DNA of 56,342 bases, filler included, from Sluysia triapertura (Eukaryota): assembly GCA_046118255.1 (NCBI GenBank). It is 4 parts of 4 records of this genome, joined end to end, with 100 filler letters (N's around TTAATTAATTAA, not from the genome) between each part and the next. Parts side by side here need not be neighbours in the genome. Positions count along the whole stretch, not along the records: positions 16,083 to 31,195 come from JBJNIA010238772.1; 3 more parts are not named here. One strand, written 5' to 3'. Position 1 is the stretch's first letter. The number at the start of each line of letters is the position of its first letter. A program made the position numbers and the translations under genes. Of this stretch, positions 16,083-39,594 are shown piece by piece. The notes under the pieces were generated by a model. That model saw only the letters and a list, made by a program, of their open reading frames with translations, did no database searches and was not told the origin of the DNA.

Positions 16083-16198
16083 AAACCATTTATGTTTTGG
16101 TAGGACTTTATTTTGATATTTATTTTGTTATAAATATCATTATAAATATCAATAGTTGTAATGATTGGACGTCCATACTGGCGTTCTGCATATTACTA

Positions 16199-16610
16199 CC
16201 AGGGATGACACAACTCCAATAAAATAAATGTTTTTTTAAACTAAAATGTAATGAATAAAAACAAGCTACCAACAATTGTATATTACCTTGAATGTTTGTT
16301 TTAGTCGGTTGCTAAAAATAAGCCTAAATTTCACCGTTTTCCTCAAATGAATTGAAGCAGCGTTCCTTAAGCTAAAAGTTTTCAATTTCGTTATTGTATT
16401 TTCCTACTTTTTCCTTGTTATCTTGTTTCTGATTTTCTATAAAATATGACGCATTATAGTAGTTTTACGATCATGTGGGAAATTGAAAATTGAAAATTGG
16501 AAATTGGACAAGACGGCATTTTAAAACTGGCCACTCTTTTTAGTCGGTGATAAGCCGACCAATTTTACTGATTAAATTTCGACAGTAATTTCCGCATTTA
16601 TGTTAAACAA
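16199..16610 (+). repeat. Interspersed repeat C, copy 1
   Basis: CCAGGG(A/G)TGACACAA start and TTTTAGTCGGT(G/A)ATAAGCCGAC hairpin block shared with 27393-27790. Confidence 0.65.
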
Positions 16611-17081
16611 TTCCTTTATCTTCTCAACATCATTAAATTAAAATGTAATATCATTGTTATATTTTATTGAATCAATAAGGCAATTTATTAACTTAAATTA
16701 AGGAAAAAATTAATGGAATATTAAATTTATTTTCCTATAAGAATCTTTTATAAAATACGTTGTGCGTCAACCGTACGTTCAAGTTCAATAATATATTTAG
16801 AATAGTATCTTTATAAACATCAATTTAATATATACTTTGTTACTACTTAAACATCGGAACATATTATAAAAACTAATTAAAGTAACTAATTGTTATGTTA
16901 TCTACGTCGCCATGTTTCGTAATACTTCAGACTTAAAAATACTAACAAAACTCATAATTATGCACTAAATCTAATATTATTCTAACATGAGCAAACATTT
17001 TTATTAAGTTATTAAATTAAACAAATTTTTATTAAATTAATTAACAAATGTACTTTAATACTATAATAAATAAAACCTTAA

Positions 17082-19153
17082 TGTGGTGGTCCAGCCCGCA
17101 ACTACATACACATGATATAAATCACACCAGTCAATTTCATAAACCTCATCACAAAAATCACATCATAACAAGTTTTGCTCGCATCATTCACTACATCACA
17201 TCACTCATCCTTACAAAATCATTGATGCGTAATAAAATTCCTTTTATTAACATTATGATCAAAACATTAAACACAACATGCGTTGTCATCTTGTCATCAT
17301 TATGACGCAACATCCTTTTGCTTGTGTCTCGCAATCTTTTATTTTATATTTTACATCTGAAATATAAAAGGTGATCGTAGTTTCCGTATTAAACTTGTTG
17401 AGACTTGTTATAAATAAAACCTATAATGTCGTAACTCGTACGAAAGAAAGTACATGTTTAAGATTGCTCGATTTCTAAAAAAATTTTTTAAAAACAGATC
17501 TTGTATAATCATCTTAATAATTTTTGTTTCATCTATTTTGAAATTCTTCCTACTTCAGATGTGTAATTTTTATTCAAAAATTTATAATTTATAGTTTTCA
17601 TCCAGTGACATTTTTTAGTTTATTTTTCATCAATAATTGTCAATCGAAAGACCTAACTATATTTACAATTTTGATATTTTTAATTGTTTTTTATTAATTT
17701 ATTACTTGACATCGTTTCACTTAATATATTAACAAATGAAAAATATTGCGAGGTTAATACACTTCAAACGAAATATTGAAGTGTAACAATTAATGATTTC
17801 TTAATCAAATTACCTTAATTTTGAATAATATTTTCATTTAATATAAGGAATGTTCTTGAATTAATACTACACACAACTTATTGATTTAATCAGTTAAAAT
17901 TTGTTTATTATTATTTTTATTATTATTACTGCTATTATTATCATTTTTTATTATATTTATATAGTTCAAAAATAAGCTATATATCAAACAAAGTTTTAAA
18001 ATTTTACAAATTACAAAATCATTTTGTTTTTAATAAATTTTTTCTTGGTATAATGTTAAAGGCGATCAGATTTAAAAAATCGAACAGCATGATGTCGACT
18101 AATTTTTACTCTCTAAATGGCGATATCGATTGTGTGAAGAAAGTTATTGTAATACACTATCTCATGGCCTTCCTCATTTGTGTCAAATAATGGATGAAAT
18201 TGTTACAGCCGCTACTGAATTTGCAGCGCTTGCAAGCTTCAGCAAATTCAGATCAACTAAGAGTTTACTGCGGTTGCTTTCAGTAATTCTATACCATCGG
18301 CGATTTTTATCAATTTATGTTTCAAACATTTTTCAAGGAGTAGATGAAAGAGAATGTTACATGGAAACATTACAACCATGTTTTGACAACCAAATAGTGA
18401 AGAAAAATCAGTCAAACGTTGAAGTAAAGAGCTTGATGACTGCAGACGCAATGTTTTTTAAAGGTATGTGCAGTAACGTCGTAGAAAGATATATTTATCG
18501 TAGTAATGATGTTTATTCTATTTTTTAAAGTTTATGGACAAAGTACTCTTATTTTAAAATACGTTTTATGTTTTGAAGTTTATAAAAGTAATTACATTGA
18601 TTTAAAATATGCTCGTAAATTTAGTAATGTTTCGATTTTTAAAAGTTTATGAACAAATTACTCTTATTTTAAAATATGTTTAGTTTATTAATTTGCGTCA
18701 AGTTGACTATGCCGTTTTAAAATACGTTTCGTTTTATAAAATTGATGACGAAGTGACTAAAGTCTACCTACAAGATACTGATAATAAGTCGAGCGGACCA
18801 CATCGTGTTGAGGAAAAGATTGACATCTCCGATCTTAAAGAAGTTGTTCCCACGCATGTGGACGGTACTGGGCAGAGCAACTATCCCGTGTCAGTTACAA
18901 CGGTGATCCGTCGAGAAGGTAAGCTTTACTTACTGAAATTTGTTTCTTTCGTGAGTGTACGAAGAATAGCTGTAAAAATATTTTATTGTCGCTAAATAAA
19001 CAAATTCTGTGTTATTTTTGTCTTAAGAGGTTATGTCATAATAAAGTCTTCATGTGCCTTAAGCATCCATTTCCTAATTATATTTATTTAGATTCTATTA
19101 AGAATTTTTTAATCAATTAACTAATGAAAACAATAATGATAACTTATCCAACA
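17082..19153 (+). mobile_element. Cargo element E2 (divergent), 4-bp TSD TTAA
   Basis: TTAA|TGTGGTGGTCCAGC ... ATCCAACA|TTAA; A/C-rich 5' part; internal ORFs 18130-18528 and 18693-18995 followed by AATAAA. Confidence 0.55.
18130..18995 (+). pseudogene. Unassigned cargo ORFs of E2 (132 aa and 100 aa)
   Basis: ORF track; higher GC than flanks; separated by ~40-bp direct repeats at 18527-18567 and 18641-18680. Confidence 0.35.
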
Positions 19154-19481
19154 TTAAATACCTAAACGAAAAACACAACTAAGATAAATTCTATAATTCT
19201 AATATAATTAAAACTAATAACCGTAAAAATAATGTTAACGATAATGTTGCTAATCGTAAACACAAAGTTTCTAATTTCAATACGATTAGATCCAGAATAC
19301 TTATAAAGGGTTATTTCTTTGTATTTCTCATTCTTTTGTTTTGATTCATACTTGTTCAAGTATTTTATAATATCTTATTTAATTCTTCAATGATGTTCAT
19401 TTTATTTTTGTTATCGTGATGTTGGGATTACCCAGTTAGTGTATAGAATATAGGTTAAAAGATAAGAGAATTTTATATGTA

Positions 19482-20043
19482 TGTGGTGGCTAACTTTTCA
19501 TACAAAATTTTATTATGTATTTTTATACTAAACCACAACTTTACAACACTCAAAACACTAACAACATCAAAATCATTATATTTATATTTTAAAATTTTCT
19601 TTTAACACTTCTAACGTCATTAAATGTCTCTCACAATTTCTCTTTTAATTTATTTTTATTATCCGTCCCATTTCTCTTTCTATAATAATCCAAAACATAA
19701 TATACGTCAGCATCATCCAAGTTTGTTTCAAAATCGAAGAAATGTCGAAACTAATCAAAATGCACTATTTGACGATCACAATATGTTATCAGATTTTGTT
19801 TCTACAGCAAGGAGTTACTATGTTATCAATAAATTGTCATATTTTACACCGAAAGCAGCCAGAATGAATTATGATTCGAAAAATCTAGTAGAGCATGGCG
19901 TTCAAGAGCGAAAAATACAATTAATAAAGACGAATATTTATATATTTTAAGATGTCAATGGTTATCAGCATTAACTATTTTTAAAGTTTTACTTTCATTA
20001 TGTTCAATTATTTTATCAATAAAGGAATATATTATTTTATACA
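19482..20043 (+). mobile_element. Short or deleted cargo element E3, inserted in host repeat H
   Basis: Starts TGTGGTGGCTAAC...AAAATTTTATT like the other copies; residual ORF 19624-19950; minus-strand H resumes to the left (19420-19437 matches ~8130-8146); right end approximate, no TSD found. Confidence 0.45.
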
Positions 20044-20734
20044 AATTTGTAATTAAGAAATATTTAAAGAAAAAGAATATTAATTTTAAAGAGAAAGAAC
20101 ATAATTTAACAAAGATTTAATGAAATTTTAAGAATTAGAATAAAGATAAATATGAAAATAAGCAGGTATCATAATTAAACATAATCTAAACATAATTACA
20201 TATTCCTAGAGCAAAAATAATGAACAGTAATATGTTTATAATCATTTTGGAACCGAAGAACACCTTGGAATTCCAAAGATATTTGTAGAGTATTGAGACC
20301 CTTATGAAGACTTAAGTAAGTATGAAAAGATATCTTGAAGTATGAAGATACCTTTAAACTTCTGAACGTTTGAAACCTTAATAAACTTTTGAGACATTCA
20401 AATAACTTTGTAAAATGTTAGGAACCTTTAAAATGTTCAATAATTAAAATCATGGTTAATAATATTAAAGATAAATTTGATACATTAATAATTTAAATAA
20501 AAAAGTAGAAAAAGGAATTAGGGTGGTGAAGGTGAAAACATCTAAAGCCTCCTGAATACCTTATAAAGTATTTAACTGTTGAGGGGTTTTATATTTTAAA
20601 ATTGGTTCATTAAAAATCGAATTATTATTATAATAAAAACAAAAATAAAATATGTGTAATTTATTTTTACACTCTTTAACATTTGATAATAAATAAAATT
20701 TACACAAAATTATATATGATGCATATATATAAGA

Positions 20735-21208
20735 TTAAAATACTGTCCCGAGTAGTACGCCACGTATTACTCCCACTCCACTATCTAAACAAAAATAAAA
20801 ATTTATAATATTATTATCGGTGTAAAATTTAATTACTTTTAGTTCGTTATCAATCGTATTGTTATTGCTGGTGTTCAGATTTGATGTTTCGAAGGATCTT
20901 AAGATGTTACCGATTCGATAAAGATGATTGACGTTCTGTAAAGAATTGGTGTATGAATTCATCAGTTCTTTTACTGTATGGGCTTAATTACAGCTGTTCC
21001 CATATTTATCACAAGTTCCTTTTTTGTCAATATCAAATAGGCACATTGCTCTTTTGATACTATTATCAGAGTCCATATATGGTCAACGAGTTTGATATGA
21101 ATTGCCTTGTGATTGATCATCTTTATAATTGTTAAGTTTGTAATCATCAACTCTTTCATTTTCAGAACAATCATAGTCAGAACTACATGAAAACATAGGA
21201 ATATTCAT
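20735..21208 (-). pseudogene. CCCH zinc-finger cargo gene of E4 (Unkempt-type finger), two premature stops
   Basis: One frame from ATG 21208 contains IKRAMCLFDIDKKGTCDKYGNSCN*AHTVKEL (C-x9-C-x6-C-x3-H); stops at 21083-21085 and 20984-20986. Confidence 0.7.
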
Positions 21209-21402
21209 AATAATCTGTTATTTAATGTACAATAAATATCCGTAATGTTAATCTTTTAGTTGAAAAATTTTTGAAACCGTAAAATTTTACCAAATTAACT
21301 GGTGTATGATTATTGTAATTGAGACAATAATTTTTAGATGTGTTTATTGTTTGATCGTACAAAAATAGCATGAAAATTCTCAATGGTAAAAAGTAAGTAT
21401 TG

Positions 21403-21670
21403 ATTGGTCATCCAACCAGAAGTATTGTAATGATAAAAGCAGTGATACTTGTTCTGGTTGGATGGTCAATAGAACACACAAATTATCAATCACAAATTAA
21501 ATGATTGATGTGTGAACTACTATCAGTGGTGACATTGACTGTAATTGTAAATTAATACAGTCACCACTGGTAGTGGTAGTTACCAAATAAATTAAGTAAA
21601 AATAATAAAATTAATAAAATTAAAAATGGTAATAATAATAATAATAATAAAATTTTATTATCATTATTAT
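21403..21670 (-). promoter_or_regulatory. Conserved hairpin cluster and CCAAT box of E4
   Basis: Inverted repeats 21403-21421/21452-21470, 21485-21509, 21516-21533/21560-21577; GACCAATCA on the cargo strand. Confidence 0.6.
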
Positions 21671-24667
21671 TATCCTAAAAACGCATAGATTCTCTGGTTC
21701 TGTGAATTACACATTATTTATTTTAAGTCTTTACCTTCTGAACATATTAAAATCTATTTAAACAAACTAGATATCTTTAATGGTGTATGGAGGTTAAATG
21801 TTATGATGGAATAATGTTTCTAACTGAAGATGTTAATAGAGTGTAGAAGGTTATGACTTAAGTACTTTGGAATAATATAAATGTTAAAATATCTCCATTG
21901 GTGTTTTGAAAAAGTCATGTTTGGTTGTTAGGATTTAATGATAAAAGATCATACATTTAGAATGTTTCAGATGATTTAAAAGTGTATGATAATTCATTTC
22001 GAATGTGGTTGAAATCGAATTGTCAAGAAACGAAGAATAAAATATTTTAGATGAATTTTTAATGTAAATTAATGGTTTTGAATGTAATTGTGGTTTGACT
22101 CTTATGAGATTGTTGGTTTAATTGGTTTTAACGGATGAAGATGTTTTAGTGGATGTAAAAGAGATAAATATGGGAATGTTAAAATGTTTAAGAGTATGGT
22201 TTTACGTACAATGTGTTGATTTAGTTTAATATTATTTTATATTGAATTTAGAATGTAAATGGTAGATTTTGAAATGTTTTAAAAAATGGAAGTTGATCTC
22301 TGTCGATGTAAAAGAAATAAGATATAAAAACGGTTATGACGAATTTTGCAAAATGTTGTGCAGTGTTGCAACGAATATGATTTTGATTATTTTTTGTATT
22401 AGTTGTGAATTTGAAAATTTGAGTTTTATATTTTGGGAATGAATGTTATTTTGGCAAAAGCTTATGTAAAAGAGATGTTTTTGATGAGTTTTTTTGGGAA
22501 ATATGAAATGTAAATTTTAATAAAATTTGTTAAGGTTATGTGTTGGCCACCACATTAACAATTTCATAATCATAATAAAACCTTTAAACTTAAAATAAAA
22601 TAAGTTAACTTAGCTTAACTTAATTACGAAAAATTACGTTAGTGTGAATAACTTTTAAGTGAGAAAAATTGTAAATGTGAATGTATGTGTTTTAAAGAGA
22701 TCTTGAAGATAAATAGTGAGGAGGTCATGCGAGGAAAACTTCCATATCCAGCAGAGTCGAATTTTAATTAATTTTTAATTAAAAAATGTTGAAATTTTCA
22801 TATTTAGAATGATAAAAAGATAATGAATTGAATATCGAATGATTGCTTTAAAAGAGGAGAAATATTGCTACTTCTTTAGCAATTCTTTATTACTACCAAA
22901 TTTATTTTAATCGAGCATTAAATTTAGAACTTAATAAGATTTAAAACATTCGAATTCGGATATATTCAGTTTAATGTAAATATATTAATGAAACAATTAA
23001 GGCCTACAACTCTGATCAATATTAAAACGGTAAGATATTACTTGTATTGGTCAGACATTCTAGAATAACCAGAGCAGCATCTGACCGTCAGTAATTTAAA
23101 TAATAATAATAATATAATAAGCCTACGGTGGTAGAACTAGTAGGAATTTCCCAAAAATTAAATATTCGCACTCTATAAAAGAAAATTTATGATTGATTGG
23201 TTCAGGATTTTAACTCAAAAGAATTTAATCAAATAATTCACAATAATTTTATTTTAAAACAAGTTTGGCAGGGAACCTCCGAAAAACAATTTCTAAACAG
23301 CTTAAAATATAAATGTTAAAATAGCGATAAAAAGCAAATAAAAACACTTTCAAAAAACTACTTTACACGCGAGTTCCCCGAAAATACTTAAAAATAAAAT
23401 ATTATTTTCAAAATAAATAATTAGTAACAAAATAAAAATAAAAAATTATATTTTTACAAATTCTTGGATACTCTTCGATTATACCGCTACATTTGTTATC
23501 ACCTCTTTTGTGCTGTTTCTTATTGTGTTGTAAAATCTTTAAGTATTACTCTATATACTTTCCCATCCACTAATCATTCTTGAATTTTGCAATTAAACAA
23601 TCTCTCACTTAAATAATCAAAACATTTTTGAAAATTAAACCGATAATAATAACTTTGACATTTACATAGTACGGCCTGTCAGACTTTATTAGATGCAGAC
23701 CACCAAAATTTAATTAATGATCAACCATTATTTTTAATTATCAGTATTCTTAACATACATAAAATAATGAAATTAATTTTAGTTTTTAAAATTCAATTGA
23801 TTTTGGTTTTTCATACCCAAGTTTTTAATATAAAACGTTTAAGGTTTTTATTTTCAAACAAACCACTCTACAAGCTGTGGAGGCCAACCTATTATCTTAA
23901 TAAATTTTATTAAAAATGTACATTACACATTCTCCAAAATTCATCAAAAAAATTCCTTTTACATAAGTTTTTGCCACCATAACATTCACCCCAAAGTCTA
24001 CAATTCACAATTAATACAAAAATAATTAAAATCATATTCGTTTCAACACCACATAACAACCTTGTAAAATTAGTTACAACTGTCTTTATACCTTAATTCT
24101 TTTCTCATTCACCAAAATAAATTCTAACTTCTCAAAAAATTTCAAATATTCAACCTTATAACATTCGAGCCACAATCACATACAATACCAGCAAATTACA
24201 CTAAGAAATCCATTAAAAATATCTTATTTGTCATTTCAGAACAATCTAACCACAAACATATCTCCAAACTAATTCAAACATTCTAAATTCATGATCCTCT
24301 GCGGCACATAAAGACATAACTACTTAAACATATCAAGAAAATAAATCATATTTTTTAACATTCTATAATCATTTTTGCAAACATACTAAAAGCTAGACTA
24401 TAATTTACATTTTTACAATCACTAAACCACACTCTTCTCAATGTATCTTTAGGTCACAATCTCCTAATATTCAAACATCATCTTCAGTTAAAAACATTAG
24501 TCGACATCTAAAAATTCATTTGAAAAGTCCTAAACATTACCGTACAGCATTAGAACTACAATTTTTCAAAACGTTTCTTATTTTAATAAGTTTAATGTGT
24601 TTAGAAATGCAAGAGTTTCAAAAGTGAGTTCATGTGAGTTTAGAAATAAAGAGTTTATGCTTTTTGG

Positions 24668-24940
24668 AATAATAATAATAATGATAACATTTTGTTGTTA
24701 TTATTATTTTTACCATGTTTAATTTTTATTATTTTTCAATTAATTTATCTAAATTATTAATTTGGTAACTACCACTAACACTGGTGACGGCATGGATTTA
24801 CATTTGCAGTCAATGTCACCACTGATAGTGGTTTACACATCAATCATTTAGTTTCTGTCATCTATTTTATGCGTTTCTATTTGCCATCCAAATACTACTG
24901 TTGTTATCATCTCAATGCTTCTGGTTGGATGACCAATCAA
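24668..24940 (+). promoter_or_regulatory. Conserved hairpin cluster and CCAAT box of E5
   Basis: ACCACTAACACTGGTGAC (24771)/GTCACCACTGATAGTGGT (24815); TTCTGGTTGGATGACCAATCA at 24919, ~85 nt before ATG 25022. Confidence 0.6.
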
Positions 24941-25021
24941 TAGATACAGTATCAGAGAAAATTTTATTGTTACAATTTTCATACAAAATGTTAAGACTCA
25001 GAAATAATGCAAATAAAATGA

Positions 25022-26575
25022 ATGTTCAAAACACATTATTATGTTTTTTTTAAAATCAAAGCTAATAGTCTCTTAAATCAAGACAATGGAAATTACGCAA
25101 AGATCAGAATTTTCAATCTAAATTTAGAATTTTATACAATGAATGATCTTAAGGAAGATTCATTGTGTTTCCTGTTCGATAAAATAGAGAATTTACACAG
25201 ACCCGATCATTCAGAAGATATATTAACAGCACTTAGGGTTCATACTAACCCATTATCAGTTATGCTCATAGTGAATGCAAATCTTAATCTGAAATTCAAT
25301 ATTAATAATCAAAATCAAAATAATACCTGTGAAATCAATGCACCTAACGAAAATATTTCATATATCAAAAAGAGTTCGCAATCGAATGATCATCGATTTA
25401 ATAGGATTGTACGAAATTTTCTTGGTAATCATATAACCGATAATACCGATAACAAAGATGCAAATTCAATGAATAGATTAAGTATTAAACTTATTCAAGA
25501 TTGTTTGATAATCCTAAGTAAACTATCCGATTTAAATGTTACATGCATGAAGGATTTAATTCTGATTAGTATCATTCCATATAAACTTTCTCAAATACAA
25601 ATAATTTCAATGGATTTATATAAATACATCGACTCAGCCACCTTCTTTTACAGTGGACTGACTCTATTCAACAAAAATAATAGATTATAATTTAAACGGG
25701 ATGTAACAATTAAGAAGTTGTATGATTTGTTCTTGAGAAACATGTTGCAATTGTTGGGAGAAGAACCAGTTACATTTGAATTATCAAAATTTTATTTGAA
25801 CTGTGTAATGCTGGAAAGGGATATTTTACATAATGACATTAGAAATTTAGCAACCGATGAATTTATGACATTTATTAAAGATGTTTGTAGTCAAATAGAA
25901 ACTGAAAAGTTGAAACCAATAGATCTTATTTTAGACGGTTTGTCAGACAAAAGTTATTCTGCGAAACAATGAATAGCTAAACTTTGAAAAGAGAAATTTC
26001 ATCAGACGCAGGTTTGATTCATAAGTGTGATTTAACTCGTAAAAGTTTTAAACTATGTATTCAAAACATTAACAATTAGTTTTTATCATTTATTCTTAAT
26101 GAAATTACTTTAGACTACGTTATTTGTAATGTGAGACAAAATGAAGTAATACGTACTGATAATGCTCCTGATTATCAAGGAAGAATCAGTTATATTAACT
26201 TAAATGGTTTAATAGTAGTTCGTTGCGATCTACTTGAATTACGTAATGACCTTAACATTATTTTTGATTATTGGCACCTTTTGCGCACCTTGATAGCGTG
26301 TTTGAAGTTTACCGAAGAAACAAATGAATGTAATTTGCTAAGAGTGATGACAGAAAATTTTAATAAAAGTTCGGTATTTAATCTCTTAACAATATTTAAG
26401 AGTAAAACTAATTCCGAGATGATAGAAAAGAATGAAGATGAACCTAAAGTAATTACATTTTACACCAAAATAATGATATCATAATTCTTTATTTTTATTT
26501 AAATAGTGGAGTGGGAGCAATACGTGGCACATCATGTGGGACAATTTTTGTAACTTATATGTATTTATTAAATAA
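25022..26575 (+). pseudogene. Cargo gene of E5, interrupted; weak nuclear-receptor-LBD-like segment; 3' end homologous to E4/E6 cargo
   Basis: Consecutive ORFs of 222, 84 and 117 aa; ILSKLSDLNVTCMKDLILI has LBD-signature spacing; putative intron 26449-26506 followed by TGGAGTGGGAG(C/T)AATACGTGGC shared with E4. Confidence 0.55.
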
Positions 26576-27392
26576 AATTGCATGTAATTTTTATTTCTTA
26601 TGGCTTCTAATAAACGTTAAAATTAAATCTCAAACATATTTGTTTTTACTTTATTATAATAAATAAGTTAATTCGGATTGAGATATCATTAAATTGTAAT
26701 ATAGATTCTCCTTTTTCAGAGAAATAACCTCATATTCAATTTATTATCTTTTTATTATTTTAAGTAAGAAAATTTCAACATTTTATAATTAAGAATTAAT
26801 TAAAATTTGACTTTGCTCAATACTAAGGCTTTCCTTGTATGAACTTTGTTAAACGATACCTTCATGTAAAGGTGTTTATAAAACATTAGTCATTCAAAAT
26901 TAATTAAGATTTTGAAAAATTAATCTATTTTTAGACTTAATTTTACATTATGTTTAAAGGTTTTATTAAGATTCTAAAGTTATTTAATACTTTATAAGGC
27001 ACTCAGGGCTTCTAGGTACTTTCACTTCCACCACCCTGATTCCTTTTTCTGATTCTTTATATTAATTATCAATGTACCAAATTTATCTTCATTATGAGTA
27101 ACAATGAATCCAGTTCTGAAACATTGTAAAGATTTCAAATATTTTGTTAAATTACTCAAAGGTCTCAATGCTTATCAAAGATTACTTAAGGTTGAATAAG
27201 GACATAAGTGATCTCAAGCCTTACAAGTTCAAGGGTACTTTAATGCCTCTAGAGGGTTTCCAAACCCATCTCAAGCCTCCGCAAGGTTTCAACACCTTAT
27301 AAAGGTCATTGGAACTCCAAGATATTTCTCGGCTCTCAACATCATTCTTATTCCAACAATGTTTATAATGTTATGTTATAATGTTATAATAA

Positions 27393-27790
27393 CCAGGGGT
27401 GACACAATTTATTTAAATTCTCGCACCCGTATTGATACAAAATGAACTCAATATAAAATAAATCACTAACCCTACATCCTCTAAATCTAAATATTTATGC
27501 GAATCAATTACTAAAGAATAAGCCTTAATATCACTGTTAACCACAGATAAATTAAGGCAGTTTTCCTCAGCTAGAAAGTTTTGTTATCTTAACTTTAACT
27601 CTGGTCTCGGTTGTTTTTACTTCTAACTCTGTGTAAAAATGTAACTGTTTATGTAGCAATTTTATGATGTTGTAGGAAATTAAAATTAGAAATTGAACAA
27701 GGAAATTAAGCTGTGTATTCTCTTTTAGTCGGTAATAAGCCGACTAATTTTACTGATTGAATTTCGTCAGCAGTTACCATCTATGTTCAA
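27393..27790 (+). repeat. Interspersed repeat C, copy 2
   Basis: Same start and hairpin block as 16199-16610. Confidence 0.65.
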
Positions 27791-28182
27791 ATTCATACAT
27801 ATTGAAGTTCCGAATTTGTTTTATTATTGAGTTATAATTTAATATTGTAAATTAAAAATAATAAAGACGCAACATATTAAAAAACAAATAGCTGTAAAAG
27901 TGAAAATTAACTCCGTTAAACGATAAGTTGTATAAATCATGCGTTAAGCTAGCTAAAACACGCTAACTCATTAAGTAAACTTATTTTGCTTTAGAGTTAA
28001 GAAAGATAATTCTAACATGTTTATACAAATTAATTAAATGAATAATACTGCTTACACTATTCTTAATTTTATTAGTTTAAATAATCTGATTAAATTTTGA
28101 CACAGTGTGACGTTTATTTTCATTAATTTTTTAAAATCTATTTTATAATTTTCAAATCTTATATCGATCTAAATTTTACTTA

Positions 28183-28698
28183 ATGTACGAAATAATTTAC
28201 GATAAATCTGAAATTCCAAAATATCCGTATAAAAAAAAGTACGATGTACCAAGTCAATTTAAAACAGCATTTGAAGGTTACTGCATCTTTTATAAACGAA
28301 AAATGATAGATACGGAATTTTTAATAAAAATTTTAAATGTGTGCTACTTACTAATACCGCCCGAATTAACTGAAGATACAGTTAAGTATGAATTATGTCG
28401 GTTGAGATGCACAAACATAATGGAACCACTTTTAGATATAATTGATTTTGATCATTTTCTTTATTCAGTTTTAGCATTATTGTATGCAAAATCTAAACGA
28501 ATATCTCATATTAAAGCTTATGATGAAATGGTGCAAAGTTTTCTTGATCATGCTCCGCCTATTCCTCCTCCCCCTCCCCCACCACCACCGCCAGAACCAG
28601 AACCGGAGAAAGGGAAATCTCCAAAAAGTAAAGGAAGTAAAAGTAATAAAGGCAGTAAAGGTAGCAAAGGTAGCAAGAAAAGTCCTAAAAAGAAATAA
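28183..28698 (+). CDS. Possible p25-alpha/TPPP-like protein with polyproline linker and basic K/S/G tail, 171 aa
   Basis: Clean ATG-stop ORF; AFEGY...FLIKILNVC...IDFDHFLYSVLALL follows the p25-alpha spacing pattern; family call tentative. Confidence 0.6.
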   Translation: MYEIIYDKSEIPKYPYKKKYDVPSQFKTAFEGYCIFYKRKMIDTEFLIKILNVCYLLIPPELTEDTVKYELCRLRCTNIMEPLLDIIDFDHFLYSVLALLYAKSKRISHIKAYDEMVQSFLDHAPPIPPPPPPPPPPEPEPEKGKSPKSKGSKSNKGSKGSKGSKKSPKKK

Positions 28699-30133
28699 TA
28701 TTTTTATCTTTATTTGCAATTATTCACATTATGAATAATTATAAATTATTTTGAAAAAGTATAAAAATAAAATTTTCTATTCTATTCTTATTATCAATTA
28801 GACATTTTTTTAGAATAATACATCAAATTTTTTTATTTATGTTGCATGCTGGTAAAGTGATTATAATTTCGTATAAATATTTTAATTTTTGAATTTTAAT
28901 TTTAATCCTTTGAATTTTAACTCAATAACTATAAAATTTGTTAAGTTAAAATTTTACAACTTAAAATTTTAGTTTAACACTTATGTAATCAAGATCAGCA
29001 AATTACAGAACCTTAAATTTATTTTTATTATTATACTGTCATATAAGATGTTCCAAATTTTCTATACTGTCATATAAGATGTTCTAAATTTCCCTAAAAC
29101 ACTACTATGAAATAATTCGACATTACATCTGTAACTTTCTTGTCATCAACAAATGATTGTTTTAATTTTTTTAAATAACCGAATAGAGTTTTTTAATGTT
29201 AAAATTAAAAAATAATAGTATTTTTCTTTAAAAAATTTTTATTTCACTTGACGGTTTCGGACTATGATGTTTGGATTTTTCTCACGAATATTTACTTTAG
29301 CTTTGTATTCTATTTAATGTTCGCTTGTGTGGTGGTTTAACAGTTTTTCTTAAAATTTTATCCACAAATTAAACAACAATACAAGCTTTTAAGCGGTTTA
29401 ACACAAAATCTTTCCATTTTAAAATATTTGTTCGGTTTTCCTTACTCTTCGAACAATTATAAAAATGTTAAATTTATATTTTGGGTCCGCCTACGCTAAA
29501 CGATTTACCTATAATGGACGTCTGCGTAGGATTTTAAAGCTTTGTCAAATGAATTAAAGAGGGTCAGTATTATATGCTCTGCTGTTAGAATGTGTTTGTA
29601 TTTTTTAGAGGTTAAACTTTTATCTGATCTTTTTGTCTTTTAATATATTCAAAAGAAATTATTCACTTTACTATATCCTTATTAGTACTTAAATATCTTT
29701 AATCTTTTCCTTTATATTTTTTCAACTATTAAAAAATTCTTTAACTTTCTTTAATTGACTTTTAATCTTTAAAAACTTCTATTACACTTTCTTGTTAAAC
29801 AATTATTATAACACAACAAAAACTTGATATAGGAACTTTTATTATATAACAAAGTATAAAACAATTTTAGAAAAATTCAGTTCAATAAAAATTTTAGATA
29901 ATGTAGACAATTATAATAACAATATATATATTATAAGTTTGAGTGGGATTTTAACCCAGAAGGTACTTGTGGGTGTATTCTAAATAATTTATAAAAGAGT
30001 TTACGTGTAGTTTAAGACCGCAAACAATAGGGTCGAAATCTTATAAATAAATAGCTTACGTAATCTTTGTTTGAATATTAGAGTATCCGAAATTGTGCAG
30101 ATCGAGTCGTGTAACCGAATAATTTGTTTCACC

Positions 30134-30278
30134 AATATCTTTGCCAAATCGGAATATCTTTACCAAAAAATTGAAATATCTTTACCAAATTGAAATATCT
30201 TTACCAAAATTGAAATATCTTTACCAAAATCGAATATCTTTACCAAAAATCGAATATCTTTACCAAAAATCGAATATC
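30134..30278. repeat. Minisatellite, about 7 copies of ~18-20 bp (GAATATCTTTACCAAAAATC)
   Basis: Directly visible tandem units. Confidence 0.9.
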
Positions 30279-30892
30279 GACTAAGATTTTCCGACAACTA
30301 ATAATTGTGCTTTATATACTTTTTTTTGCTGTAAATATCCGATTGAATTAAAATTATTATATCCTTTGTAATAATGGTATATTCGTTTATTTTTTGGTTG
30401 AATAAAAATTTAAGATAAATTTCCGTAGTTAAATTATAATGACTTTTACATAAACATCCTTATTTTTTGGTTTATCGTAATAATAATAAAGATAAATTAA
30501 ATCATAATAATGTAAGTTTTCAGATAAACATAAAATTTTGATGTAATAAATTTTCAAATAAACATAAATATTGTTATTCGTTTGTACATAATTGTTTATA
30601 AAATTATTATATTTTTACAATTATTATTGACACAATTAATAATTATTATATTTTTACAATTATTATTACAATTATTATTTTACTTTAAATTAAAATATTT
30701 TCATCGAAATAAATTATTATTATAATTATTATTTACAACTCGACATAATTTATTTTCTTTATTTACAATTTCTAAAAAAATAATATTCGAAAAAATAAAT
30801 CGAAAATTCTGTAACATTGATTTTTATTGGCTGATAAGTGGTTTAAATTAGTTTAGTTTAAATTACAATTTAATAACATAATTAAATAATTA

Positions 30893-31038
30893 TGTTAGAC
30901 TTCATAAAATGAATTGACCGTGAATCGAACCTGGGACTTCTCGCTGTGTAGTTCAATGCTCTAGCACTCAGCTATCAGCCTCGTCTAACAATTTTTGGAT
31001 TAGAATAATCAACCATACCTTAGGCCTATATCCCAACA
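30893..31038 (-). mobile_element. tRNA-carrying mini element, copy 1 (decayed)
   Basis: TGTTAGAC...CCCAACA on +; flanks ATTA/ATAA (3/4 match); tRNA-like sequence at 30910-30981. Confidence 0.7.
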
Positions 31039-31195
31039 ATAACACGATAATCTGATCTAGCCATCTTGTTTCAGCGATTCAAAATAATTTGTATGAATAT
31101 TTTTTTGGATATTAGTTTATTAACCACTTAACGCATAAGCCCGAGTTAACTCGGGCATGTGTTACCATCAAAAAGATTATTAACTCTATTTTATT

Positions 31196-36994: not shown

Positions 36995-39594
36995 TGTGGT
37001 GGTCAACCTATTACTTTTAACAAATCTTATTAAAATTTTTCTTTTCAACATAATAAAAACCGCATTTACTTTCAAATTCACATTTTTAAATTCATTATAA
37101 ACACTTTCATACATAGTTCAATACTAACATAACCAAAATCATATTTTTTAACATCACACAATTACTTTTTAGAATGTACCAAAACATAGTCTATAATCTA
37201 TCTTATTCGCATCCACTAAACTACTCTCTTTCCATATATTAGCAAATCACAATCTTCTAACATCCAAACATTACCTTCAGTCAAAACATCAATGTATATT
37301 TAAAAATCCACATAAAACCTTTATATAATTTCAAAATACTTAAAATACTTTCATCACCCAAACTTATCTTCAGTTAAAACTATTAAACAACATTTAAAAC
37401 TTCATTTAAAACATTTTACCTAGTATTGTATGACATTAGAGTCACAATTACACCTTAAAATTTTATCCAAAATATGTAACATTAATCTGCAACATCACAA
37501 GTTCACCATTCTTTAATTCCCATAACTTCAAATATGTTTAGAAATAATAAAAGAATTAGAAAGAAAGTTTGTGATAAAATTATTGAAAGGATTTATGCTG
37601 TTTATAATGATAATAATAATAATGACATTGTTATTATTATTATCATTTTTATTTTCATTATTTTTAATTTTTAATTTTAATTTTATCATCTAACCAGTAA
37701 TTACCACTATCAGTGGTGACACTATTGGTTACTTTGTATAAATTCTTGTCACCATTGATAGTGGCTTGTCTGTCAATCTTGTTCTCTTCTAACGCTATTA
37801 TTGTACCTGATCATTATTTTTATCACTCTGGTTGAACAACCAATGAAGACAATCTCTCATTTGCTGTTGTGTAATTATGTATTGATAGTATTGCAATATG
37901 ATTGGTACTAAAAATAGTGATACTATAATTACCACAATTACAATTTGGTTGTTAATTTAAAAATTAAATTAACACTGTAGGAAATGTTTTATTTTTAAAT
38001 CGTAAAAGCACAATTTTTGAGTTATTTATGATCACATAGTTAAAGACAATAGAATATCTAGATTTAATGATAGACAAACATTTCGTAAAGCGTGTATCAA
38101 CTGTATATCATAGTTCTCAAACAATCAAACCTATAAGTATGAATATAATGACTTCAACAACTGAGTTGGAAATTATCACTCAACCAAATGAAAGTATTTT
38201 ATTAAATCTAAATAACAATAATCAAGAACATGATGGTCAGGAACGACGGAAATGCTTATACATTAGTATTGCAGAAAAAATTGATGAAATCCTCATTTAT
38301 TATATTTATTTACATGTTCTCTATCCTAGGCTCGATGTTAATATTTCAAGAGAATTTACTAATCCAAATCTAGAGCAGACTATTACTCCTATAGATTGCT
38401 ATGAAAATATATTCATTGTAATTAGACGTGAAGTTCGTGAATTGAGAACTCCACCACCAGTTTCGACGATAAAACGAGATTAATCATTGACAATTATATC
38501 AGTATATTCTCTCAATGTTATCTGATTTCAAAAGTGAAAAGATCAAGTGAAAATTTAAAAGAGCATGCCTTTTATGAATTTACGATGCCAATTCGTATAG
38601 AATTACTTGATAATAATATAGATAAATTTGAGCTGATTCAAGGGATGCTGCGTTTTCGAATAGGAGTAGATATAATTAGTCATGTTGATATCATTGATCT
38701 GAATCAAAGTGTAAAGTTCGCATCAATAGTTACTGGTAAAGTTTATGCTTACTCTAGTCCATGTAAAAGAATGCTTATGACCGATATACAAGTTAAAGAA
38801 AATATTATATTGAACATAAATATTATCAAACCTTTTAAGATAAGAACAATGAATACAAGCCTAAACTTAATTTCGAATAAAGCTTTACGAATTAACGCAT
38901 CCCAGTTAAGTATCAAGTACAAAGACCAATGTAAAAATGACTTGGAAATACGTTCTGTATACTGATCCTTACAAACATCGTCATTTTAGCTATACGTTCA
39001 AGAATTTAATATACCTTCCATCGGTTACTGTCAATTCAATTTCTCACAACTGTTTCAATAATTCATCAAGTTCAAATTAATGTATAACAACAGCACTTTG
39101 CCCATCTACTAGTGACATAAATGGCAGATGCACAACATTTGGAGTTAATTGTGTATATGTGCACGCGGTTAATTAGTTATTGAATCATAGATTCGAATAT
39201 ACATCTCACACAGATCATCAATCCAGACTTAGGAATTTACTAAAATGCATTGGAATACCAACCTCAGAAATATAAGACAAGATTGGTTATACTAGTTATG
39301 ATAAAGTAATTTTTCTTTATTGTTACACCAAAGGCAATCTAACTTCTATTTTCTTTTTAGATAGCAAAGCGTGGCTAATCGAGAGGAACGTATACAGAAC
39401 GATCTTCCTAAATGTTCAAATTTTTAAATTTTGTATGTTGAATAAAATGTTTTGTGTTTACAGATTTTCGTTCATTATTTATAAACTTTAAATTCATTCT
39501 TCTTTTTAGATTCGATGAATATTAACTTAGGAATAAAAGTTTTAAAAATTAAGATAAAAAATGTTATAAAAACGCAATTTTATATAAATCAAAA
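36995..39594 (+). mobile_element. Cargo element E6, 5-bp TSD CTATT
   Basis: CTATT|TGTGGTGGTCAACC ... AATTTTATATAAATCAAAA|CTATT; 5' module and hairpin 37704-37764 homologous to E4/E5. Confidence 0.8.
38067..39426 (+). pseudogene. Cargo gene of E6, interrupted, with Unkempt-type CCCH finger near the C-terminus
   Basis: ORFs of 138 and 143 aa, then ITTALCPSTSDINGRCTTFGVNCVYVHAVN*LLN at 39084-39185; putative intron from 39306 to 39360 or 39364. Confidence 0.65.

What the first reader, a model, noticed from the sequence alone, without database searches (positions are those of the whole stretch)
20735..21208. Hidden Unkempt-type CCCH RNA-binding finger shared by the E4 and E6 cargo
Seen: E4 IKRAMCLFDIDKKGTCDKYGNSCN*AHTVKELMN and E6 (39084-39185) ITTALCPSTSDINGRCTTFGVNCVYVHAVN*LLN both have C-x9-C-x6-C-x3-H spacing. 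Both have exactly 47 codons from the His to a K|GTAATT site, with shared H..R..N.L. The ORF track misses both because of stops. Protein divergence is high but the zinc ligands are kept, implying past selection. Known: this spacing with a D-x-x-G-x-C core resembles an Unkempt finger. Inference: an element-borne RNA-binding protein, possibly acting on the element's own hairpins or on host silencing.
Basis: partly seen in the sequence, partly recalled or inferred. Interest (0 to 1): 0.75.

Follow-up and report, generated by a model that had tools for sequence, protein, structure and literature searches.

The report
Decayed Unkempt-like zinc finger relic
A short remnant of one Unkempt-type CCCH zinc finger, broken by stop codons, sits in the variable core of a duplicated repeat unit in an AT-rich eukaryotic genome. 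It is most likely a dead gene fragment, not a working RNA-binding protein.

Summary
The pattern C-x9-C-x6-C-x3-H is really there, on the minus strand at 20978-21043. The 158-codon frame that carries it has two in-frame stops, and the four ligands do not lie in one open stretch. The open stretch with the first three ligands matches Pfam PF25427 (UNK-like CCCH finger) without gaps: E 1.7e-5, 25.1 bits, below the 31.1-bit cut-off. The exact spacing arises in 0.7% of shuffles of the piece, so the finger type is probably named correctly.

The functional reading is not supported. There is only one finger and the frame is broken. A span this open occurs in 30% of shuffles. The tail of the frame is read from a shared flank in which the sister copy differs by a 2-nt indel.

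The locus is an inverted duplication, about 20190-22870 against 23826-27340, with 74-80% identity. The two copies share a 5' module with hairpins and a 3' module, but their cores are unrelated. The right core holds an orphan 222-aa ORF and a Kidins220-type SAM-like domain, and it is also broken.

No relatives turned up in any protein, viral or metagenome search, and the class of the unit is unresolved. Best reading: a decaying gene fragment carried along in a repeat.

The parts
20735..21208 (-). The finding's reading frame: 158 codons including the final stop, broken by two in-frame stops. Its last ~40 codons are read from the shared 3' flank.
20978..21043 (-). The C-x9-C-x6-C-x3-H pattern (domain bounds), a relic of one UNK-like CCCH finger.
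   Evidence: Pfam PF25427 E 1.7e-5, 25.1 bits, profile 6-27 of 40; 5elh E 0.73
20861..21190 (-). Left unit, variable core (~330 bp) with no counterpart in the right unit.
21191..21701 (-). Left unit, 5' module A. It is strongly conserved at 21398-21701 and weakly conserved down to about 21190. Three adjacent hairpins lie at about 21404-21586.
   Evidence: (z -7.2); Rfam shows only a chance-level MIR827 hit
21702..22554 (-). Left unit, upstream module X, with only 6-7% G on the unit's sense strand.
22557..22870 (-). Module Z (~300 bp) at the inner end of the left unit. It recurs inside the right unit's 3' flank.
20190..20860 (-). Left unit, 3' module B (B1 about 20625-20860, B2 about 20190-20575).
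23826..24641 (+). Right unit, a remnant of the end of Z followed by module X.
24642..25050 (+). Right unit, 5' module A. Only the first hairpin is kept (about 24763-24839).
   Evidence: (z -2.4)
25022..26484 (+). Right unit core, a former coding region. It has ORFs of 222, 84 and 117 codons in two frames. Read as one gene it has at least two stops and one frameshift. The 222-aa ORF has no relatives.
   Evidence: (325-codon span with two or fewer stops; highest shuffle 201)
26146..26319 (+). Kidins220-type SAM-like domain in the right core.
   Evidence: Pfam PF23307 E 1.5e-9, 38 bits, above the 27-bit cut-off
26425..27340 (+). Right unit, 3' module B, interrupted by a copy of Z at about 26700-26985.

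Best explanation
The stretch 20978-21043 (minus strand) is the relic of a single CCCH zinc finger of the Unkempt-like type. It lies in the ~330-bp variable core of a ~2.5-kb repeat unit.

The unit's flanks recur in inverted orientation 3-6 kb to the right. These flanks are a 5' module with hairpins and a G-poor upstream stretch, plus a 3' module. There they surround an unrelated core: an orphan ORF plus a Kidins220-type SAM-like domain.

Both cores are decayed coding sequence. The finger most likely came from a fragment of a CCCH-finger gene that was copied into, or together with, the unit and has been drifting since. This copy makes no RNA-binding protein.

Shown: the pattern, the profile match, the broken frame, the single finger, and the architecture of shared flanks around unrelated cores. 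Inferred: origin as a captured or duplicated gene fragment, and loss of function.
For: - Pattern and frame.
- PF25427 zf-CCCH_UNK scores E 1.7e-5 with 22 residues on 22 consecutive profile positions. No other zinc-finger family is hit.
- 5elh Unkempt is the only CCCH chain among the PDB hits, and it matches the same residues.
- The exact spacing occurs in 0.7% of shuffles.
- Twelve other open stretches of the same piece gave no Pfam family. Two of them are Cys-rich controls.
- Two in-frame stops in 158 codons.
- One CCCH pattern in the whole piece.
- Inverted duplication with 74-80% identical flanks and cores with no similarity.
- The right core was certainly coding and is also broken.
- A 2-nt indel between the arms early in the 3' flank means the tail of the frame is not a conserved coding sequence.
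Against: - The Pfam score is below the curated cut-off (25.1 against 31.1 bits).
- The same 32 residues also give weak EF-hand matches (Pfam E 0.023; centrin E 0.005).
- The near-open frame is what chance gives in 30% of shuffles.
- A codon-usage score favours the frame (top 0.8% of windows), but the model failed its own leave-one-out check.
- No parent gene, no second copy and no relative could be fetched, so 'fragment of a host gene' is inferred, not shown.
- The class of the unit is unknown.
Confidence: 0.58

Rival explanations
1. Chance. An AT-rich non-coding stretch happens to spell a CCCH spacing in one frame, and there never was a finger.
For: - Some generic CCCH spacing occurs in 32% of shuffles, and a frame this open in 30%.
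- The Pfam match is sub-threshold.
- Rival EF-hand matches show that short matches come cheaply.
- No relatives were found.
Against: - The exact family spacing occurs in only 0.7% of shuffles.
- The profile E-value of 1.7e-5 becomes about 0.007 after correction for 426 open stretches.
- The His sits at the right distance beyond the piece that was scored.
- Control stretches gave nothing.
Confidence: 0.2
2. One reading: the repeat units carry a working (or recently working) Unkempt-type RNA-binding protein that acts on the unit's hairpins or on host silencing.
For: The finger type is plausible. The left unit has three strong hairpins next to the core.
Against: - The frame has two stops, and the ligands are split between open stretches.
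- There is a single finger and no further domain in the core.
- The sister unit has another core altogether and has lost two of the three hairpins.
- The tail of the frame lies in a flank that is not conserved as coding sequence.
- No intact relative exists among 5.8 billion clustered proteins of similar length.
Confidence: 0.07
3. The stretch is a relic of an EF-hand (centrin or calmodulin type) and not of a zinc finger.
For: Pfam EF-hand_1 scores E 0.023. Centrin chains are the best PDB hits, at E 0.005-0.4, covering the helix and the first half of the loop.
Against: - The score is 14.6 bits against a 25.4-bit cut-off, and 10 bits below the CCCH match.
- Loop position 12 is not acidic (reading).
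- The match stops at the middle of the loop.
- Trimmed to the core 20 residues, the query finds nothing.
Confidence: 0.05
4. The two units are a diverging pair of ordinary genes with conserved regulatory flanks and fast-changing coding parts, as in gall-midge salivary protein families. On this view they are not fragment-carrying repeats.
For: The flanks are conserved up to about the start codon and from about the end of the frame. The arrangement is inverted and falls within 15 kb, as described for SSSGP-1 (PMC2955719).
Against: - The cores are not merely diverged. They are unalignable and differ four-fold in length.
- Both are broken.
- No signal-peptide-like start can be read in either.
- The cores carry pieces of unrelated intracellular domain families.
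Confidence: 0.08

Closest known systems
Unkempt / UNK-like CCCH zinc fingers (Pfam PF25427; mouse Unkempt fingers 1-3, PDB 5elh)
   Same: Same Cys/His spacing, with an ungapped match to 22 consecutive profile positions. The His lies at the expected distance.
   Different: The score is below the family cut-off. There is one finger, not clusters of fingers. The frame is broken, there is no RING or other Unkempt part, and it lies in a repeat unit.
Transposons that carry gene fragments (non-autonomous Helitrons, Pack-MULEs)
   Same: Shared ends around unrelated interior segments that look host-derived, with decayed frames. A hairpin-bearing module is present. Literature: PMC2575219, PMC3288121, PMC4778049.
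   Different: A unit has no terminal inverted repeats. No recognisable Helitron termini appear where homology ends. The hairpins are internal, not near an end. There is no transposase or Rep/helicase ORF in the piece. Only two copies were seen, and they are adjacent.
Gene families with conserved non-coding flanks and diversified coding parts (Hessian fly SSSGP; PMC2955719)
   Same: Inverted or tandem copies within about 15 kb, with flanks better kept than the coding part.
   Different: Here the cores are unrelated rather than diversified. They are broken and lack a shared signal-peptide region.
Duplicated pseudogene fragments in segmental inverted duplications
   Same: Arms 74-80% identical, decayed frames, indels, and a nested ~300-bp module.
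   Different: A plain duplication does not explain why the two arms hold different cores between the same flanks.

Membership tests
UNK-like CCCH zinc finger (PF25427) | Profile score at or above the curated cut-off (31.1 bits) | tested here: inconclusive
   25.1 bits, E 1.7e-5, for the open stretch holding three of the four ligands.
UNK-like CCCH zinc finger (PF25427) | Three Cys and one His at the family's spacing | tested here: met
   C-x9-C-x6-C-x3-H in the conceptual translation. 22 residues align to 22 consecutive profile positions. The exact spacing occurs in 0.7% of shuffles.
UNK-like CCCH zinc finger (PF25427) | Uninterrupted reading frame through the finger | tested here: not met
   Two in-frame stops in the 158-codon frame; the ligands are not in one open stretch.
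Unkempt proteins | Several CCCH fingers in clusters, plus further parts of the protein | tested here: not met
   Only one CCCH pattern exists in the 15-kb piece. The other stretches of the frame have no Pfam hit.
Unkempt proteins | Sequence-specific RNA binding | not testable with these tools
   No expression or binding data are available.
EF-hand | Profile score at the cut-off and a complete 12-residue calcium loop with an acidic last position | tested here: not met
   14.6 bits against 25.4. The last loop position is not acidic.
Helitron-type fragment carriers | Defined 5' and 3' termini with a hairpin just inside the 3' end | tested here: inconclusive
   The ends of homology between the two units are ragged and show no such termini. 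The hairpins lie about 1 kb from the nearest end. Two copies are too few to fix the ends.
Helitron-type fragment carriers | Shared ends around heterogeneous interior segments derived from genes | tested here: met
TIR transposons that carry gene fragments (Pack-MULE type) | Terminal inverted repeats within one unit | tested here: not met
   The self-comparison shows no inverted similarity between the two ends of a unit.
Kidins220-type SAM-like domain (PF23307), right core | Profile score above the curated cut-off | tested here: met
   38 bits against 27, E 1.5e-9. The structure model was unusable (pLDDT 48).

The most novel reading that the evidence does not exclude
The units belong to an undescribed kind of repeat. 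In it, fixed flanks (a hairpin-bearing 5' module and a 3' module that both cores enter in the same reading frame) are combined with interchangeable, unrelated coding cores. One such core is an Unkempt-type finger that is intact and expressed in other copies of the genome.
Probability: 0.07. Interest if true: 0.6.

Novelty: new member of a known kind. Interest (0 to 1): 0.2.

Why it matters
As it stands it matters little. It is one more decayed gene fragment inside repeated DNA, and it is not evidence of an element-encoded RNA-binding protein.

The architecture around it is of modest interest. Two copies have the same flanks and wholly different former coding cores, one of them with no relatives anywhere. 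If the source genome holds many such units, they would be a record of how gene fragments are shuffled in that lineage.

Tried and rejected
- **Word-index protein searches.** The 82-aa stretch after the finger, the 171-aa neighbouring ORF and the 117-aa SAM-like ORF all came back blank.
- **Full HMMER search.** The 222-aa right-core ORF against 1.84 billion representatives gave 0 hits.
- **Exact-product look-ups.** Two ORFs were looked up and neither is on record.
- **DNA pattern scans.** Scans for the best-kept flank motifs in viral contigs gave 0. In metagenomes, six loci (L001-L006, 38% GC) share only the 21-mer and are unrelated.
- **Viral-contig scans with both right-core ORFs.** None found.
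- **Rfam and tRNA scans.** Only a chance-level miRNA hit (E 0.2) on the third hairpin, and no tRNA.
- **PDB search with the 20-residue core of the finger.** Nothing.
- **Other genetic codes.** They do not lengthen the frames beyond chance.
- **Codon-usage score.** It favoured the frame, but the model failed leave-one-out, so I do not rely on it.
- **Single-sequence structure model of the SAM-like ORF.** pLDDT 48, unusable, so no fold search was run.

- A profile scan of the whole finger with X at the stop. That string has no reference and would have had to be typed.
- Any joined reading of the right core across its frame change.
- Any comparison with E6, which is outside the piece.
- The source organism could not be named. 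The Pfam families suggest an animal, and GC is 25%.

Full report
**Setting.** The usable piece is 16083-31195. It has 25% GC throughout, no tRNA genes and no Rfam family apart from one chance-level hit. Long open frames are few. Alternative genetic codes do not open the frames beyond what shuffles give. This looks like repeat-rich, gene-poor eukaryotic DNA. I could not name the organism.

**The observation.** The pattern C-x9-C-x6-C-x3-H lies at 20978-21043. The frame has 158 codons and two in-frame stops, and the four ligands are not within one open stretch.

Shuffles of the piece give these chance rates:
- exact spacing: 0.7% of 300 dinucleotide-preserving shuffles;
- any generic CCCH spacing: 32%;
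- a 158-codon span with two or fewer stops: 30%.

**Is it a finger, and of what type?**
- The 32-residue open stretch with the first three ligands hits Pfam PF25427 (UNK-like CCCH zinc finger). The match is E 1.7e-5 and 25.1 bits against a cut-off of 31.1, with residues 10-31 on profile positions 6-27 of 40, so it is ungapped.
- No general CCCH family is hit.
- There are 426 open stretches of 20 aa or more in the piece, so the corrected expectation is about 0.007.
- The His, which was not part of the scored piece, lies at the expected distance.
- Twelve other open stretches of the same DNA gave no family at all. Two of them were Cys-rich controls.
- In the PDB search, mouse Unkempt (5elh) matches the same residues, but only at E 0.73. 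Centrin-type EF-hands score better (E 0.005) over the N-terminal half. Pfam EF-hand_1 gives E 0.023.
- The EF-hand reading fails at the end of the loop, scores 10 bits less, and vanishes when the query is trimmed.

I take the Unkempt-type finger as probable, not proven.

**What surrounds it.** A self-comparison shows that the locus is an inverted duplication. Read in the direction of its frame, the left unit runs from about 22870 down to about 20190. The right unit runs from about 23826 to about 27340. About 1 kb lies between them.

The units share, at 74-80% identity:
- an upstream module X whose sense strand has only 6-7% G;
- a 5' module A;
- a 3' module B.

In the left unit, A holds three adjacent hairpins (z -7.2). 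In the right unit only the first survives (z -2.4). A ~300-bp module Z stands at the inner end of the left unit and is also found inside the right unit's B.

**The cores.** Between A and B the two units have nothing in common.
- The left core is about 330 bp and holds the finger.
- The right core is about 1.4 kb and was certainly coding. It has a 325-codon span with two or fewer stops, against a maximum of 201 in 200 shuffles.
- The right core has ORFs of 222, 84 and 117 codons. The last of these carries a Kidins220-type SAM-like domain above the Pfam cut-off.
- Read as one gene, the right core has at least two stops and one frameshift.
- Its 222-aa ORF has no relative among 1.84 billion representative proteins.

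- The 'site' 47 codons after the His is the start of the shared module B. Equal spacing in a second copy therefore means common descent of the copies, not conservation of a protein.
- Both cores enter B in the same reading frame for its first seven codons. The arms then differ by a 2-nt indel, so the last ~35 codons of the finding's frame are not a conserved coding tail.
- There is one finger only, while Unkempt is described as having clustered CCCH fingers.
- Nothing indicates that this copy can make a protein. Whether the finger was once under selection cannot be tested without the other copy, which lies outside my piece.

**What the unit is.** I could not classify it.
- A unit has no terminal inverted repeats.
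- No Helitron-like termini appear where homology ends.
- No transposase, Rep/helicase or reverse transcriptase ORF exists in the piece.
- Neither right-core ORF has a relative in viral contigs, and the two flank motifs tried have no match there.

Shared ends around unrelated, decayed, gene-derived interiors work like the fragment-carrying non-autonomous transposons described in the literature (PMC2575219, PMC3288121, PMC4778049). Membership in any such family is not shown. The pattern also recalls the gall-midge families with conserved flanks and diversified coding parts (PMC2955719). Here, though, the cores are unrelated, broken and lack a shared signal-peptide region.

**Verdict.** The letters are real and the finger type is probably right. 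What is there is most likely a dead fragment of a CCCH-finger gene in the variable core of a duplicated repeat unit. This is an ordinary finding, and I score its interest low. The swapped-core architecture is the one feature that deserves a genome-wide census.

- I did not send the whole finger with X at the stop, because it has no reference.
- I did not look at anything outside the piece.
- Checkpoint note 1 names the bounds of one open stretch I searched, which amounts to naming where the frame is interrupted. I declare this as a slip and have deleted nothing.

Noticed in passing
window 20190-22870 and 23826-27340: Inverted duplication of a 2.5-3.5 kb unit, arms 74-80% identical. The flanks are shared but the cores between them are wholly unrelated.
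   Followed up: yes
window 21702-22554 and 23876-24641: Module X has an extreme strand bias, with only 6-7% G and 20% C on the unit's sense strand over about 800 nt. The cause is unknown.
   Followed up: partly
window 21404-21586 (left) and 24763-24839 (right): Three adjacent strong hairpins lie in the left unit's 5' module (z -7.2). Only the first is kept in the right unit. The third gives a chance-level Rfam hit to a plant miRNA family (E 0.2).
   Followed up: partly
window 25022-26484: The right core is former coding sequence. An orphan 222-aa ORF has no relative among 1.84 billion proteins, and a Kidins220-type SAM-like domain lies at 26146-26319. Read as one gene it has at least two stops and one frameshift.
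   Followed up: yes
window 22557-22870 and about 26700-26985: A ~300-bp module (Z) is present once at the inner end of the left unit and once inserted in the right unit's 3' flank. The last ~40 nt of it also precede the right unit.
   Followed up: partly
window 28183-28698: A 171-aa ORF with a run of Pro followed by a Lys/Ser/Gly-rich tail. Stop to stop it spans 187 codons, longer than any shuffle gave (132). It has no significant Pfam family (best E 0.002, well below cut-off) and no relatives in the word search.
   Followed up: partly
window 16309-16607 and 27508-27790: A direct repeat of about 300 bp at 69% identity. It is a second repeat family, followed in both places by different sequence.
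   Followed up: partly
window 30134-30278: A tandem array of about 7 copies of a 20-nt unit, about 90% matching.
   Followed up: no
window 18130-18995: The only somewhat GC-richer stretch of the piece (32%). It has ORFs of 132 and 100 aa with no Pfam family, and might be exons of a host gene.
   Followed up: partly
L001-L006 (metagenome contigs): Six contigs of 38% GC share an exact 21-mer with the third hairpin's arm and nothing else. This is a chance match.
   Followed up: yes
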